DNA of 19,674 nt from Octopus sinensis (taxonomy: Eukaryota), in assembly GCF_006345805.1 (NCBI RefSeq), contig NW_021824084.1, forward strand, positions 1 through 19,674, written 5' to 3'. This document shows, in pieces, positions 3,247 to 13,164 of the stretch. A program made the translations under genes and the position numbers. Below the pieces are notes generated by a model. The model saw nothing but the letters and a program-made list of their open reading frames with translations, made no database searches and was not told where the DNA came from. The stretch's first letter is position 1. The number at the start of each line of letters is the position of its first letter.

Positions 3247-3447
3247 TGTCTTCTATTATAAGCACAAGGCTAGAAACTTGGTGGGAGGGCGCCAGTCGAT
3301 TAGTACGCAAGTGGTACTTAATTTATCGATTCGAAAGGACAAAAGGCCAAGTCGATCTCGACGGAAATTGAAATCAGATCATAAAGACAGACGAAATATC
3401 ACCAAGCATTTCGCCCGGCGTGCTAACGATTCTGCCAGCTCGCCGCC
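3247..3447 (-). mobile_element. tRNA-derived SINE family A, monomer (core resembles Meta/MESC domain, from memory)
   Basis: Reverse complement shows the head ggcggcgagctggcagaatcgttagcacgccgggcgaaatgctt, a degenerate B box, the core gacttggccttttgtcctttcgaatcgataaattaagtacc and the tail ccttgtgcttataatagaagac(att)n. Confidence 0.85.
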
Positions 3448-3492
3448 TTAAGGACAACAACAACAACAACAACAACAGAAGTAATAATAATG

Positions 3493-3556
<64 letters not shown>

Positions 3557-3557
<1 letters not shown>

Positions 3558-3937
3558 CCTTTCTACTATTGACACAAGACCTGAAATTTGTGGGGAGGTG
3601 GCCAGTCGATTTGATCGACGTCACTTCGAAGCTGGTACTTAATTTATCGACCCCGAAAGGATGAAAGGTAAAGTCGACCTCGGCGGAATTGGAACTCAGA
3701 ACGTAAAGACAGACGAAATACCACAAGGGGCTAAACACAGAGAGGACAAACAAGGACAGTCAAATGGATTAAGTCGATAATATCGATCCCAGTTTGTAAC
3801 TGGTACTTTATTTAATCGAACCCGAAAGGATGAATGCAAAGTCGACCTCGGCGGATTTTGAACTCAGAAAGTAGCGGCAGACGAAATACCACCGAATATT
3901 TCGCCCGGCGTGCTAACGTCTCTGCCAACTCACCGCC
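3557..3937 (-). mobile_element. tRNA-derived SINE family A, dimer
   Basis: A full head unit (3721-3937) is followed by a second headless B-box plus core unit (3557-3722) ending agtagaaagg(att)n. The core aaagtcgacctcggcgga appears twice. Confidence 0.9.
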
Positions 3938-4120
3938 TAATTTTTTATTATTTTCAACTCATGGTTAGATGAGGCTTCAGAAAAACAAGTCTATAGACTC
4001 ATTAAAATGTTTCTCCCGAGGAAATCCTTAGTAAAAGGCGAAACATTTATCCGCTCGGGGTAACGAGAAACCAGAATCTATGAAAGAATAATTATTTCTA
4101 ATATATATATATATATATAT

Positions 4121-7391: not shown

Positions 7392-7440
<49 letters not shown>

Positions 7441-7769
7441 GTGTGTGTGTGTACGTATGTATATATGTAATGTATATGTAATATATATATATATATGTAT
7501 ATTATATATGTATATACCATACATATATATGTATGTGTGTATATAATATATGTTCATGTATATGTATGTTCTTATATATATATCCATATATATCTATGAA
7601 CATTCCTATATATGAATATATTTGTATATATGTACATGTATATATATATGTATATATATACAAATATACATGCATATATATATATACATATATAAACATA
7701 TATAATATATATGTATATACAAACACAGCATATGTTTTATTTATATAATCTATATATACATATTTAAAC

Positions 7770-7809
<40 letters not shown>

Positions 7810-8216
7810 TACACGCATATTTATAATTATGAATATCTGATATTTTGAATTCGATATGTATAGAAATGAGCAAAGAAGAACATGCATATGTGTATATATA
7901 GGTGTGTGTTTGTGTGAGCGGAAGAAATAATAAAAAAGAAAGAGAAATGGAGAGAGATGCATGTGCTTCTTTTTATGTATGCAAATGTACTTGTCTGATA
8001 TGCAGATGCACACACACACACACACAGGTGCACACATATATGTCTATATGCAAAAATCAGTCTCGCTATCTTCGTCATTCTCTCTCCCCCTCTCTTTCAC
8101 TTTATTCATATATACACGAAATATGTGCGTATGTACATACATATATATAACACACACAAACACACACATACGCACACACACACACACACACACACCCACA
8201 CACAAACACACACACA

Positions 8217-8263
<47 letters not shown>

Positions 8264-8650
8264 TGCATATAAAATATGAAATACATATATGATATCAATG
8301 GATGTATATTTGTTGTATATATATATATGCATTTGAAGCTAGATACATAACATACATATAAAATATATATATATATGTATATTACATATATAATATATTA
8401 TATATATATATATAATGTATACATATATATAATATATATTAATATATATATATGTATACACACATATATATATATACATATATACAGACATACATACATA
8501 CATGCATACATACATACATAGAAAAACATAGATGTATGTACATATATATATATATATATATAGATATATTTTATAAATGTACATACATATGAACATATAT
8601 CTATATATATATGTGTGTTGTTTGTTTGTTTGTGTTTGTGTGTGAATGTA
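7070..8650. repeat. Large compound microsatellite field (TCTG, CA, CT, TA, TACA)
   Basis: Directly visible. It accounts for all listed ORFs in this interval. Confidence 0.95.
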
Positions 8651-9290
8651 TGTACATATGTTATTCAAGTTCATGTGTATGTGTGTATATGTTGGTGTAT
8701 AATAAAAGCATGGGAATTGGTACACAGCTGCAAACAAATCGAGATTTTTCATTTTAATTCGATAGCAAATGAATAAATGTATATACGTGTGTATATAAGT
8801 ATGTGACGTTGATGGTTTTTCGTGGCGTGTAGAAAATCGCACATCGATCGACGTAATTTTTGCTTGGTTTATCATAAATCTTCTACATTCATGCAGTATG
8901 AAATGTATGTATGAGTTTGTGTGTGCGTGTATGTGTGTGATTGTGTGTATGTATGCACACACACATACATACATTATATATATATGGCTGATTTTTGAAG
9001 TCCAATGGTACCCTACATACATATTTGATTATGAATATTTACAAACATACTTTCACAGTGAAACTCAATATACCCACCTTTATAGATAATACCAAATGTA
9101 CATTTTCGGATTTTTCATAATTTTATAATGTGATGTAAGTCTTTGGAATAGCAATTGCATGCGGTTGAAGAGAGCTTTAAACCATCTGTTATGTCGATTA
9201 TACATTGATGTAAGAATAGGTTGTTTTATAAAGCTTGAAACATGTGTACCGCGACATCCTTTGTGCTCTGTTTTTTTAATTTCATTTGAT

Positions 9291-9321
<31 letters not shown>

Positions 9322-9410
9322 CCAGAGTAAGCACATAAATACGAAACAAGGTGGAAAAAATAGTTCTCGAATACCAGAGATAGAGTAATAATGCAGCAAA
9401 AAATATCACA

Positions 9411-9456
9411 AAAACTGTTACTCAGAGTATCACGTTCCCGTTTGTCGGACAGTTTT
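9411..9456 (-). ncRNA. Minimal type I hammerhead ribozyme motif (core-mutated copy)
   Basis: Minus strand reads AAAACTGT-CCGACAA-ACG ggaa CGT-GATA-CT ctg AG-TA-ACAGTTTT. Stem I is a perfect 8 bp, with stems II and III present. The core carries G8A and A14U changes. Confidence 0.7.
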
Positions 9457-9467
9457 GTTTCTAAACA

Positions 9468-9512
9468 ATACTGTCCGACGAACGGGAACGTGAAACTCTG
9501 AGTAATGGAGTT
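9468..9512 (+). ncRNA. Minimal type I hammerhead ribozyme motif (intact variant core, weak stem I)
   Basis: Reads ACTGT-CCGACGA(9475-9481)-ACG ggaa CGT-GAAA(9492-9495)-CT ctg AG-TA(9503-9504)-ATGGA. It has a GUA cleavage triplet and a U4C core variant. Stem I is reduced to U-A, G.U, U.G and C-G pairs. Confidence 0.7.
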
Positions 9513-9550
9513 CTTGTCATATTTTTGCTGCTTTTTAATAAAGTATATAT

Positions 9551-10304
9551 TTATTTTATTTTTATTTTATTTTATTTTATCTAGTTTCAGCTCACGATTT
9601 GTGGCATGCTGGGGCACCGCCATTCGGTGTTGCTACATGATTTTACTTCATGAATGCTCTTTAGCAATTGCCATTTGGTGCATGAGAGAGTTCGATGCAG
9701 CTGCCCTCATCTGCACCTCCTGCCGTGAAGTCGGTTCATCTGGGACACCTGATAGGAAGAGATCCAGTTTTATTTTAAAGACATCTGCATCCACCCCATG
9801 CAGGTCTCTCAGGTCCTTCGGGAGGCTATTGAAGAGATGTGGGCCTCTGAAGACCAGGCTATCACAGTATCTTGTCCTACATCTTGATGGCAAATTTAGT
9901 CCTTGGTACTATGCAGTGGCGTCCAGTTCTAGCATTTGTATAACTCTCGATGCCAAAGTTTGGGACAAGTCCTTCTAGGATCTTCCAGATGTATATTATG
10001 GCATATCTTTCTCACCTACGCTCTAAGGAAATAGAGTCTTAATCTCTTGAGTCTTTCCCAGTAGCTTATATACTGCACAGAGGCTATTTTCTTCGTGTAG
10101 CTTCGTTGAATCGCCTCAAGTTCTGTGATTAACTTGACACTGGATGGTGACCATAGCTGAGAGCAATAGTCAAAGTGGCTTAGGACAAGTGTCCCCCAGA
10201 GGACCATCATGGTTTCCTGGTCTCTTGTTCTAAAGGTTCTAAGAATCCATCCGGTCAGCCGCCTACATTTCATTGCCAATTTAGTAACATGTACATGAAA
10301 GGTT
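9551..10304 (-). mobile_element. CR1/L2-group LINE, 5'-truncated copy A (frameshifted ORF2 C-terminus, 3' UTR, (TAAAA)n tail)
   Basis: ORFs 10016-10279 (GWILRTFRTR...LSHFDYCSQLWSP...LEAIQRSYTKKI...YWERLKRLRLY) and 9648-9893 (GPHLFNSLPKDLR...FKIKLDLFLSGVPDEP) match the post-RT region of CR1/L2-type ORF2. The tail is at 9551-9580. Confidence 0.88.
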
Positions 10305-10320
10305 ATATATATACATATTT

Positions 10321-10886
10321 GTTTCAGCTCAGAGTTGCGGCTATGCTAATGCACCGCCGTTTTGTGCTACACTGTTATTACGAAGAGCCTCCTCTAATAT
10401 GTGACAGTTAGTGAAGAATGGAGTTTGATATAGCTACTCTCATTTGCACCTCTGGGACTCTCTGGGTTCATCTGGGACTCTCGACAGGAAGATGTCCAGC
10501 TTTGATTTAAAAACCGCTACATCTACTTTCTGCAGGTTCCTCAGACTCTTTGGGAGAATATTAAAAAGCTGTGGGCCCTTCAAACCCAGGCTGATGCAGA
10601 AGCTGGTCCTGAAGCATGATGGCATTGCTGGGATCTTTGGCACTATGCAGTTTGGTCCCGTTCTAGCATTGGTGTAGCTTAAAATGCCAAAATTTGGCAC
10701 AATTCCTTCCAAGATCTTCCAGATATATATCACTGCATACCTCTCCCGTCTTCTCTCCAGGGAGTAGAGTCTTAGCTGTTTCAACCTTTCCCAGTAGCTG
10801 AGCTGTTGCAAAGAGACGATCTTCTTTGTGAATCTTCTCTGGATTGCTTCAAGGTCCGCTGTTAATTTCACACTGGTGGGTGACCA
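10321..10886 (-). mobile_element. CR1/L2-group LINE, 5'-truncated copy B (related subfamily)
   Basis: ORF 10440-10871 reads LEAIQRRFTKKI...SYWERLKQLRLYSLERRRERYAVIYIWKILEG...GPQLFNILPKSLRN...FKSKLDIFLSRVPDEP. The 3' end ggcggtgcattagcatagccgcaactctgagctgaaac is homologous to copy A. Confidence 0.88.
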
Positions 10887-10994
10887 TATATATATATATA
10901 CTCCAAATAAGAAAACGGGCTAAGAGATTAGCACGTCTTTAATGACCAGTTACAATTATTTCTGAACTACTCTGGTGTTCCACGCAGAAGTTTA

Positions 10995-12130: not shown

Positions 12131-12547
12131 TATACTTGCTTTTTATGGAACTAGAAACATTTATCAATGAAGCTGACAATGTGGGTGTTTTGGTGAAACC
12201 CTTATGAAGTATTTTGCAATCTGGGAATGGGTTTGCTGACACAAAAAAAAGGAAACTTTATGATAAAATAGTCGATTTGTGTGTCGAATTGTACCATCTT
12301 TCGTAAAAAATTATCCACGATTGCATGTGGGTTGCTTGCATCGGCCTGTTGTTTAATGTTCTTTATTTTATAGTCGTTTGCCAATGTCAAATTGTAGTTC
12401 ATGAAAACCCAGTTTAATATAGTTCCAAATTATGAACATGAAGAAGAATATTTTAGTGTAGTTATTTCTGATAGGTAGTGTGAATTTGTTGGATAAAGGA
12501 AAGCTTGAGTCGTGACATTTCCAGTTTTAATATGTGCCTGGGAAAGA

Positions 12548-13164
12548 GGCGGCGAGCTGGCAGAATCGTTAGCACGACGGGGGAAATGCTTAAATGTATT
12601 TCGTCTGCCGTTACGATCTGAGTTCAAATTCCACCGAAGGCGACTTTGCCTTTCATGCTTTCGGGGTCGATTAAATAAGTACCAGCAACGCACTGGGGTC
12701 GATATAATCGACTTAATCCGTTTGCCTGTCCTTGTTTGTCCCCTCTATGTTTAGCCCCTTGTGGGTAGTAAAGAAACAAGAATCGTTAGCACGCCGGGCG
12801 AAATGCGTACCCGTATTTCGTCTGCCGCTACGTTCTGAGTTCAAATTCCGCCGAGGTCGACTTTGCCTTTCATCCTTTTGGGGGCGATTAAATAAGTACC
12901 AGTTACGCACTGGGGTCGATATAATCAACTTAATCCCTCTGTCTGTCCATGTTTGTCCTCTCTATATTTAGGCCCTTGTGGGCAATAAAGAAATAGGTAT
13001 TTCGTCTGTCATTACGTTCTAAGTTCAAATTCCGCCGAGGTCGACTTTACCTTTCATCATTTCGCAGTCGATAATTTAAGTACCAGTTGCGTACTGGGGT
13101 CGATCCAATAGACTGCCCCCCCTCCCCAAAAATTTCGGGCCTTGTGCCTAGAGTAGAAAGGAAT
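12548..13164 (+). mobile_element. tRNA-derived SINE family A, trimer
   Basis: Three head-to-tail units (12548-12777, 12778-12995, 12996-13164) each contain gagttcaaattcc-type B box, gactttgcctttcat core and ctggggtcgat. Only the last unit has the ccttgtgcctagagtagaaagga tail. Confidence 0.92.

What the first reader, a model, noticed from the sequence alone, without database searches (positions are those of the whole stretch)
9393..9531. Palindrome carrying two divergent minimal hammerhead ribozymes with a non-canonical CCGACGA core
Seen: a ~140-bp imperfect palindrome whose inner 36-bp arms differ at only 2 positions. Each arm encodes a minimal type I hammerhead, one per strand, pointing outward. 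Combining the arms reconstructs AAAACTGT-CCGACGA-ACGggaaCGT-GAAA-CTctgAG-TA-ACAGTTTT (46 nt), with an 8-bp stem I, a 3-bp stem II and a GUA site. Stem III (ACTCTGAGT) is self-complementary at 8 of 9 nt. Established: minimal type I hammerheads with weak, palindromic stem III are characteristic of Penelope-like retroelements and retrozymes and cleave as dimers. The canonical core is CUGANGA, so C at position 4 in both copies is unusual. Inference: this is a cephalopod PLE or retrozyme family with a fixed U4C variant. The damage is complementary, since the plus copy keeps the core but has a weak stem I and the minus copy keeps stem I but has G8A and A14U. Read-through RNA would instead fold into one long hairpin hiding both cores.
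Basis: partly seen in the sequence, partly recalled or inferred. Interest (0 to 1): 0.85.

Follow-up and report, generated by a model that had tools for sequence, protein, structure and literature searches.

The report
Palindrome with decayed hammerhead-like motifs
A real 144-base palindrome in repeat-rich animal DNA carries, in each arm, a damaged look-alike of a hammerhead self-cleaving RNA; it is most likely a dead transposon relic, and no evidence here shows a working or new kind of ribozyme.

Summary
The palindrome is real. It spans 9390-9533, the arms are about 84% alike, and the RNA hairpin is about -90 kcal/mol (z = -17). The hammerhead layout is also there, but only the plus-strand copy (9467-9512) fits a type I descriptor, with one core mismatch (U4C). 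The minus-strand copy has three mismatches (U4C, G8A, A14U). The 46-nt "reconstructed" ribozyme is a chimera that exists on neither strand.

A one-mismatch hit is expected 0.01 times per window by chance, or about 1,400 times per 2.7-Gb genome, so it is unusual but not decisive.

Against a working or Penelope-type hammerhead:
- No Rfam hammerhead model matches, even with single arms at E<=10.
- The hammerhead fold is not the stable fold.
- Helix II is 3 bp with A10.1-U11.1, unlike Penelope-element hammerheads.
- The window has no RT or GIY-YIG coding remnant and no tandem unit.
- C4 in "both copies" is one observation, because the arms copy each other.

No other copy could be found, because the host genome is absent from every searchable collection. 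The family test therefore remains undone.

My best reading (about 0.4) is a dead, head-to-head duplicated end of a hammerhead-bearing retroelement. The close rival (about 0.35) is a foldback or MITE element that resembles a hammerhead by coincidence.

The parts
9390..9533 (.). Whole imperfect palindrome (foldback). The symmetry axis lies between 9461 and 9462, with only 2 unpaired central bases.
   Evidence: arm alignment; hairpin of -89.6 / -91.1 kcal/mol, z about -17.
9467..9512 (+). Plus-strand hammerhead-like motif. Helix I 5' strand 9467-9474; core CCGACGA 9475-9481 (C4 at 9476 where U is expected); helix II ACG-GGAA-CGU 9482-9491; G12-A14 9492-9494; helix III 9495-9503; A17 at 9504, so the predicted cut is 9504|9505; helix I 3' strand 9505-9512. 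Helix I has only 4 contiguous pairs, 2 of them G-U.
   Evidence: the only descriptor hit in the window, with 1 core mismatch; the hammerhead structure is +2.0 kcal/mol against an MFE of -7.3.
9411..9456 (-). Minus-strand hammerhead-like motif. Helix I 5' strand 9456-9449; core CCGACAA 9448-9442 (U4C and G8A); helix II 9441-9432; GAU instead of GAA at 9431-9429 (A14U); helix III 9428-9420; A17 at 9419; helix I 3' strand 9418-9411 (perfect 8 bp).
   Evidence: 2 mismatches to the plus core. (fails the descriptor at <=2 core mismatches). (hammerhead structure -5.2 kcal/mol against an MFE of -7.0).
9292..9321 (.). (TA)15 microsatellite about 70 bp to the left, part of the AT-rich setting.
9546..9650 (-). 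3' UTR and (ATAAA)n-type tail of a 5'-truncated LINE on the minus strand. The tail ends about 12 nt from the palindrome, so the palindrome lies outside the LINE.
   Evidence: both LINE copies end ...GAGCTGAAAC plus a simple repeat. TTTAT repeat at 9550-9580.
9651..10345 (-). Decayed C-terminal coding tail of LINE copy b. It is not a Penelope-like element.
   Evidence: open stretches; 103 homologues of the sister copy's tail; no Pfam RT or GIY-YIG hit.
10443..10919 (-). C-terminal coding tail of a second, tandem LINE copy a. Its own 3' UTR (10440 down to about 10300) is not followed by a palindrome.

Best explanation
The locus is a solitary, old head-to-head duplication of a ~70-nt unit. The unit is most likely the extreme 3' end of a hammerhead-bearing retroelement of the Penelope or retrozyme type. 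It is now a dead relic, not a working ribozyme pair.

Shown:
- The unit carries a type I hammerhead-like three-way junction with 10 of 11 fixed core nucleotides and a GNRA (GGAA) loop on helix II.
- The two copies face outward from the axis.
- Both copies carry C4. The minus copy has also lost G8 and A14, and the plus copy has lost most of helix I.
- Any RNA crossing the axis folds into a hairpin of about -90 kcal/mol that buries both cores.

Inferred:
- The source element already carried C4 when the unit was duplicated.
- The palindrome arose in one of two ways. Either cDNA synthesis was primed on both strands of an AT-rich target, as a PLE protein does in vitro, or a short cDNA or DNA end snapped back and copied itself.
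- The arms have since diverged neutrally by about 15%.
- Neither copy cleaves at a useful rate.
For: - The descriptor hit is unique in the window and rare by chance: 0.010 per window and about 2.5e-7 per nt. That gives roughly 7e-5 for the ~280 nt of distinct arm sequence, my arithmetic from that rate.
- The core match is C3, G5, A6, G8, A9, G12, A13, A14, A15.1-U16.1 and A17, read directly.
- Helix II is capped by a GNRA-type tetraloop, and the helix III segment is self-complementary at 8 of 9 positions. That matches the published 'small palindromic helix III' of metazoan hammerheads that act as dimers (PMC4209133).
- Published PLE biology fits the arrangement and the setting. An adjacent inverted 5'-truncated copy is common, hammerheads lie near the 3' end, and insertion favours (TA)n or AT-rich targets (PMC8557442). 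A PLE protein cuts and extends both strands (PMC11167929). (TA)15 and an A/T-rich LINE tail flank the site.
- Penelope elements are annotated in Octopus vulgaris (PMC13282606), if the host is indeed a cephalopod.
- Relic status: there are core mismatches in both copies. The hammerhead fold is disfavoured, at +2.0 against -7.3 kcal/mol for the plus copy and P about 0.004 for the minus copy. Single arms fold no better than shuffles. The read-through hairpin is about -90 kcal/mol. U4C is reported to lower activity considerably in vitro (PMC3088659).
Against: - No Rfam hammerhead model matches, even at E<=10 with 61-nt single arms.
- The PLE-type hallmarks are missing: helix II of 6-8 bp, a bulged nucleotide after A9, and a conserved G10.1-C11.1 pair. 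Here helix II is 3 bp and closes with A-U.
- No RT or GIY-YIG remnant was found in the open stretches scanned across the 19.7-kb window. No tandem unit is present, and no second copy exists in the window.
- Both arms are truncated at exactly the same point, which two independent 5' truncations would not predict.
- About 1,400 one-mismatch chance hits are expected per genome of this size, so a coincidence is possible.
- No family member could be retrieved, so ancestry rests on this one locus.
Confidence: 0.4

Rival explanations
1. The locus is a foldback or MITE-type DNA element, or a local inverted duplication of unrelated sequence, with no ribozyme ancestry. Two long inverted repeats meet at a tiny spacer, as in human Made1. 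The hammerhead resemblance is coincidental, and the small sub-palindromes inside each arm have no RNA role.
For: - The palindrome is perfectly symmetric with a 2-nt centre. That is the known shape of short palindromic MITEs such as Made1, a short MITE that gave rise to the mir-548 microRNA genes (PMC1784062, abstract seen). That Made1 is two 37-bp repeats around 6 bp is from my own memory of that paper.
- Tc1-mariner elements and MITEs are annotated in Octopus vulgaris (PMC13282606).
- No hammerhead model in Rfam matches.
- The arms alone show no thermodynamic signal.
- Helix II and the 10.1-11.1 pair are atypical for real hammerheads.
- About 1,400 chance one-mismatch hits are expected per genome.
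Against: - No convincing target-site duplication or known superfamily terminus is present. TAATAA occurs on both sides but 3 nt out of register, the flanking 8-mers match at 5 of 8 in AT-rich DNA, and the ends read GCAGC rather than the CAGT or YARNG motifs I recall for Tc1/mariner and hAT ends (read).
- No second copy exists in the window.
- A match of 10 of 11 core nucleotides in register with three helices has a probability of about 7e-5 for this much sequence (derived).
Confidence: 0.35
2. The locus belongs to an active hammerhead family with a C4 core. The family would cleave as dimers through the palindromic helix III, or with protein help.
For: - U4C is a known natural variant that still supports viroid infectivity (PMC3088659).
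- A PLE hammerhead has been shown to cleave only when its protein is present (PMC11167929).
- Helix III is self-complementary at 8 of 9 positions.
Against: - The viroid case relies on tertiary contacts that a minimal motif lacks (PMC3088659).
- Neither genomic copy is intact.
- C4 is seen in only one lineage.
- No family, no tandem partner for dimer formation, and no element ORF were found.
- Inverted copies cannot place two sense hammerheads on one RNA, and read-through RNA forms the -90 kcal/mol hairpin instead.
Confidence: 0.07
3. The locus is a hairpin-RNA gene, either a microRNA-like or an endogenous siRNA precursor, that is processed from the long stem.
For: - The hairpin is very stable on both strands.
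- Several Rfam microRNA precursor models give sub-threshold hits, for example MIR400 at 42.9 bits against a gathering score of 83 and mir-2237 at 38.8 against 70.
Against: - All those hits fall far below their gathering scores, come from unrelated plant and animal families, and occur on both strands, which is the behaviour of any long hairpin.
- From my own knowledge, a stem of about 65 bp with a 4-nt apical loop is unlike animal pri-miRNAs.
- No conservation or expression data are available.
Confidence: 0.05

Closest known systems
Minimal hammerhead motifs in the pseudo-LTRs of Penelope-like elements (Cervera & de la Pena 2014, PMC4209133; Craig et al. 2021, PMC8557442)
   Same: - Type I topology with a small palindromic helix III segment, implying dimer-dependent cleavage.
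- Occurrence as isolated motifs from heavily 5'-truncated copies, sometimes paired on opposite strands.
- AT-rich or microsatellite insertion sites.
   Different: - Helix II is 3 bp rather than 6-8 bp.
- There is no bulged nucleotide after A9.
- The 10.1-11.1 pair is A-U rather than the conserved G-C.
- Position 4 is C rather than U.
- Helix I is 8 bp in the better copy rather than 4-5 bp.
- No RT or GIY-YIG ORF or pLTR is nearby.
- The two copies are 22 nt apart in a tight palindrome rather than 100-700 bp apart.
Metazoan non-LTR retrozymes with type I hammerheads (Cervera & de la Pena 2020, PMC7229834)
   Same: - Type I hammerhead with a weak helix III.
- Low-GC setting.
- Reported in molluscs (about 5,000 copies in a mussel).
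   Different: - Retrozymes are direct tandem repeats of about 300 bp, each with one hammerhead.
- This locus is a single inverted pair with no tandem unit.
- The loop nucleotides for helix I/II tertiary contact are absent.
Made1-type palindromic MITEs, the source of human mir-548 (Piriyapongsa & Jordan 2007, PMC1784062)
   Same: A short element made almost entirely of two inverted repeats around a tiny spacer, which forms a very stable hairpin when transcribed.
   Different: - No TA target-site duplication or mariner-type termini are recognisable.
- No family copies are available.
- Made1 has no hammerhead-like core.
Natural U4C hammerhead variant of a viroid (cited in Perreault et al. 2011, PMC3088659)
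   Same: The same core substitution, so a C4 core is not unprecedented.
   Different: The viroid ribozyme is a full hammerhead with tertiary contacts that compensate for the change. This motif is minimal, unsupported by such contacts, and carries further defects.

Membership tests
Hammerhead ribozyme (type I) | Invariant core C3 U4 G5 A6 N7 G8 A9 / G12 A13 A14 / A15.1-U16.1 / H17 | tested here: not met
   The plus copy has 1 mismatch (U4C). The minus copy has 3 (U4C, G8A, A14U)..
Hammerhead ribozyme (type I) | Three helices radiating from the core, with open ends in helix I | tested here: met
   Plus copy: helix I has 4 contiguous pairs (2 G-U), helix II 3 bp plus a GGAA loop, helix III 3 bp plus a CUG loop. 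Minus copy: helix I is 8 bp.. The helices are weak, and the hammerhead fold is not the MFE.
Hammerhead ribozyme (type I) | Match to a curated covariance model (Rfam hammerhead families) | tested here: not met
   No hammerhead family is listed at the gathering score. None is listed at E<=10 on 9300-9620 or on each arm alone.
Hammerhead ribozyme (type I) | Compensatory changes in helices I-III across family members | not testable with these tools
   No other copy was found in the window, in metagenome, viral or prokaryote collections, or in the protein collections through a translated peptide. The host genome is not held.
Hammerhead ribozyme (type I) | Site-specific self-cleavage after H17 | not testable with these tools
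   This needs in vitro transcription and cleavage assays, or mapping of 5'-OH RNA ends.
Penelope-like element (hammerhead in pseudo-LTR) | RT plus GIY-YIG ORF, or its remnants, linked to the motif | tested here: not met
   Pfam scans of the open stretches >=45 aa across the window (most low-complexity ones left out) gave no RT or GIY-YIG hit. The only coding remnants nearby are LINE C-terminal tails. Extreme 5' truncation could explain the absence.
Penelope-like element (hammerhead in pseudo-LTR) | PLE-type minimal hammerhead architecture: long helix II (6-8 bp), unpaired nucleotide after A9, G10.1-C11.1, helix I of 4-5 bp | tested here: not met
   Helix II is 3 bp, there is no bulge, and the closing pair is A10.1-U11.1 (compared with PMC4209133).
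Penelope-like element (hammerhead in pseudo-LTR) | Inverted 5'-truncated copy and an AT-rich or microsatellite target | tested here: inconclusive
   An outward-facing inverted pair lies between (TA)15 and an A/T-rich LINE tail, which fits PMC8557442 and PMC11167929. Both arms are truncated at the same base, and no 30-40 bp 'tail' can be recognised.
Non-LTR retrozyme | Direct tandem repeats of about 150-400 bp, each with one hammerhead | tested here: not met
   Tandem Repeats Finder shows only microsatellites around 9200-9700. Only two core copies exist, and they are inverted.
MITE / foldback DNA transposon | Terminal inverted repeats | tested here: met
   The whole element is an inverted repeat.
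MITE / foldback DNA transposon | Target-site duplication of fixed length and superfamily-specific termini | tested here: inconclusive
   TAATAA occurs at 9386-9391 and 9535-9540 but is asymmetric by 3 nt relative to the axis. TA and TAA are frequent in these flanks. The GCAGC termini fit no signature I know (read).
MITE / foldback DNA transposon | Multiple dispersed copies | not testable with these tools
   The host genome is unavailable, and there are no further copies in the window.

The most novel reading that the evidence does not exclude
The arm is a member of an undescribed family of minimal hammerheads in this animal lineage. The consensus core of that family would be CCGANGA (C4) with an A10.1-U11.1 closing pair. 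It would still cleave, as a helix III dimer or with help from its element's protein, and would spread on a Penelope-type or retrozyme-type element.
Probability: 0.07. Interest if true: 0.6.

Novelty: new member of a known kind. Interest (0 to 1): 0.27.

Why it matters
If the arm proves to be the end of a hammerhead-bearing retroelement, the locus is an ordinary dead insertion. It would add one small example of the inverted twin structures that Penelope-type integration produces.

Wider interest would follow only if genome-wide copies showed that C4 and A10.1-U11.1 are the family consensus and that such RNAs cleave. That would widen the accepted hammerhead core for minimal, dimer-dependent ribozymes, and would mean current descriptors miss a class of them.

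The practical lesson is about method. A relaxed hammerhead descriptor yields on the order of a thousand chance hits per large genome. Two arms of a palindrome must not be counted as independent support.

Tried and rejected
1. Finding other copies:
- A translated peptide across the palindrome found no candidate in the word-indexed protein search.
- The exhaustive representative search gave only two weak hits inflated by internal repeats. P0104 is a perfect 51-aa tandem repeat and P0105 holds four repeats. I judged both uninformative.
- Exact DNA patterns from the core found nothing in metagenome contigs (two scans), viral contigs or prokaryote genomes.
- The core strings occur in no paper text.

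2. Recovering the source contig or orthologues: two window ORFs were not on record.

3. Reaching the host genome through the neighbouring LINE tail: the best homologues are 64-66% identical and sit on 0.8-1.3 kb metagenome contigs with no useful flank.

4. Treating the palindrome as part of the adjacent LINE: rejected. Both LINE copies end at ...GAGCTGAAAC plus a simple repeat, and the sister copy has no palindrome after it.

5. Treating it as a microRNA precursor on the strength of Rfam hits: rejected. All hits are far below gathering scores, from unrelated families, and on both strands.

6. Looking for Tc1/mariner, hAT, piggyBac or PIF-type termini and duplications by eye: nothing convincing.

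7. An alternative register that would give a canonical CUGANGA core or a PLE-style bulge: none works without adding an extra U before G12.

8. The first attempt to scan six-frame translations in Pfam failed on stop codons. I redid it with open stretches.

Full report
**What is there**

Positions 9390-9533 form an imperfect palindrome. The ungapped arms 9398-9460 and 9463-9525 are 81% complementary with 2 nt between them. With two small indels, the match runs from the GCAGC/GCTGC ends to the axis at about 84%. The inner 36-bp arms (9418-9453 / 9470-9505) differ at two positions. The 34-nt core occurs only twice in the window, once per arm. Transcribed from either strand, the region folds into one hairpin of -89.6 or -91.1 kcal/mol. 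Shuffles give about -28 +/- 3.7, so z is about -17 and 0 of 200 shuffles fold as well. The palindrome is therefore real and far beyond chance.

**The hammerhead reading, tested**

The plus copy (9467-9512) reads AAUACUGU-CCGACGA-ACG GGAA CGU-GAA-A CU CUG AG U-A-AUGGAGUU. It has C3, G5, A6, G8, A9, G12-A14, A15.1-U16.1 and A17, with C in place of U4. Its helix I has only four contiguous pairs, two of them G-U.

The minus copy (9456-9411) has a perfect 8-bp helix I but CCGACAA and GAU, which means U4C, G8A and A14U.

I wrote a type I descriptor requiring the fixed core, helix I >=4, helix II >=3 and helix III >=3, with G-U pairs allowed. It finds exactly one hit in the window at <=1 or <=2 core mismatches, and that hit is the plus copy. 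The minus copy fails. No other CYGANGA...GAAA with a helix II exists in the window.

Because the arms are copies of each other, the shared C4 is one observation, not two.

**Chance**

In 240 Mb of first-order Markov sequence trained on the window, the descriptor gave 2 exact-core and 59 one-mismatch hits. That is 0.010 expected per window and about 1,400 per 2.7-Gb genome on both strands. For the roughly 280 nt of distinct arm sequence, the expectation is about 7e-5 (my arithmetic from that rate). The resemblance is therefore unusual for this one locus. It is not exceptional on a genome scale, and the descriptor was shaped after seeing the candidate.

**Evidence against a functional or typical hammerhead**

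- Rfam's hammerhead models do not appear at gathering thresholds. They also do not appear at E<=10 on 9300-9620 or on each 61-62-nt arm alone, where hits of 7-8 bits are listed.
- Single arms fold no better than shuffles, with z from -1.0 to +0.8.
- The hammerhead secondary structure costs +2.0 kcal/mol in the plus copy, against an MFE of -7.3. Its ensemble probability is about 0.004 in the minus copy and 0.007 in the chimera.
- U4C is a known natural variant in a viroid. It is reported to lower activity considerably in vitro and to be tolerated because of contacts outside the core (PMC3088659). This minimal motif has no such contacts.
- Any transcript crossing the axis forms the long hairpin instead.

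**Context**

The window is metazoan, repeat-rich DNA. It holds a U5 snRNA match, 74 tandem-repeat rows, SINE-like copies, and two tandem 5'-truncated LINE 3' ends on the minus strand just right of the palindrome.

Both LINE copies end ...GAGCTGAAAC followed by a simple repeat. The nearer one's A/T-rich tail stops about 12 nt from the palindrome, and the other copy has no palindrome after it. The palindrome is therefore a separate entity sitting in AT-rich DNA, with (TA)15 about 70 bp to its left.

Pfam scans of the open stretches >=45 aa across the window (most low-complexity ones left out) gave no reverse transcriptase or GIY-YIG hit. No 150-400-bp tandem unit surrounds the site. I could not verify that the host is a cephalopod. 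The closest LINE-tail homologues are 64-66% identical and lie on short anonymous metagenome contigs.

**Comparison with published families**

Penelope-like elements (PLEs) carry hammerheads in their pseudo-LTRs near the 3' end. They are usually heavily 5'-truncated and often have an inverted 5'-truncated copy alongside. They prefer microsatellite or AT-rich targets (PMC8557442). A purified PLE protein cuts and extends both DNA strands at AT-rich sites (PMC11167929). Hammerhead pairs on opposite strands 100-700 bp apart were seen in Schistosoma (PMC4209133). An outward-facing inverted pair of tiny 3' fragments is therefore a plausible product of that machinery.

However, PLE hammerheads are described with helix II of 6-8 bp, an unpaired nucleotide after A9, a highly conserved G10.1-C11.1 pair and helix I of 4-5 bp. 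This motif has none of these. Retrozymes are direct tandem repeats of about 300 bp (PMC7229834), which is also not the case here.

On the other side, short palindromic MITEs such as Made1 have exactly this overall shape (PMC1784062). Tc1-mariner elements and MITEs are annotated in octopus (PMC13282606). Yet I found no convincing target-site duplication or known terminal signature.

**Search for relatives**

Every route failed:
- a translated peptide in the indexed protein collection;
- the exhaustive representative search, which gave two weak, repeat-inflated hits;
- exact core patterns in metagenome contigs, viral contigs and prokaryote contigs;
- exact ORF look-ups;
- paper text.

The host genome is evidently not in any searchable collection. 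The decisive test, which is family consensus, covariation, whether C4 is fixed, and linkage to an element, could therefore not be run.

**Verdict**

I weighed the rarity of the core match and the fit to PLE insertion behaviour against the atypical helix II and 10.1-11.1 pair, the silence of Rfam, the absence of element ORFs, and the exactly symmetric truncation. My estimates are:
- about 0.40 that this is a dead, head-to-head duplicated end of a hammerhead-bearing retroelement;
- about 0.35 that it is a foldback or MITE-type element, or an inverted duplication, with a coincidental resemblance;
- about 0.07 that it represents an active C4 hammerhead family;
- about 0.05 that it is a hairpin-RNA gene;
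- the remainder unassigned.

None of these readings makes this particular locus functional as a ribozyme.

Noticed in passing
window 3956-4079 (-): A U5 spliceosomal snRNA match above Rfam's gathering score (45.4 against 40 bits, full length). Its 3' end directly abuts a SINE-like repeat at about 3584-3958. It could be a true U5 gene, a pseudogene, or part of a U-derived SINE. U-type SINEs are listed for Octopus vulgaris in PMC13282606.
   Followed up: partly
window 3332-3722 (-), 12547-13134 (+): A SINE-like repeat family. The copies are 82-85% complementary across 9 kb, and a 217-bp unit is duplicated in tandem at 12562-12993 (87% matches).
   Followed up: partly
window 9546-10345 (-) and about 10300-10919 (-): Two 5'-truncated copies of one LINE family lie head-to-tail. 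Both end ...GAGCTGAAAC but have different simple-repeat tails, (ATAAA)n against (TA)n-like. From my memory of the C-terminal LxLxSLExRR motif they look CR1/L2-like. Pfam finds no domain in these tails.
   Followed up: partly
protein P0003: A 94-aa 'hypothetical protein, partial [Escherichia coli]' on a 563-bp contig is 70% identical to this animal LINE tail. That suggests animal DNA contamination in a public bacterial assembly.
   Followed up: no
protein P0104: A 310-aa predicted protein made of six perfect 51-aa (153-nt) tandem repeats matched the palindrome peptide weakly (E = 2.7e-5, summed over six repeats). It is probably a translated satellite. The relation to this locus is not credible on present evidence.
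   Followed up: partly
whole window: Microsatellite load is extreme, with 74 Tandem Repeats Finder rows. They include (AT)n tracts of 200-400 bp at 7396-7811 and 8221-8612, (CT)n, (AAG)n, (TCT)n and (TACC)n. As a result, most long ORFs are low-complexity artefacts.
   Followed up: no
window 9475-9492 and 9431-9448: The hammerhead-like core is unusually CpG-rich for a 31-37% GC neighbourhood. There are 4 CpG in 18 nt of the plus copy and 3 in the minus copy. The G8A difference between the arms is a CpG-to-CpA change.
   Followed up: no
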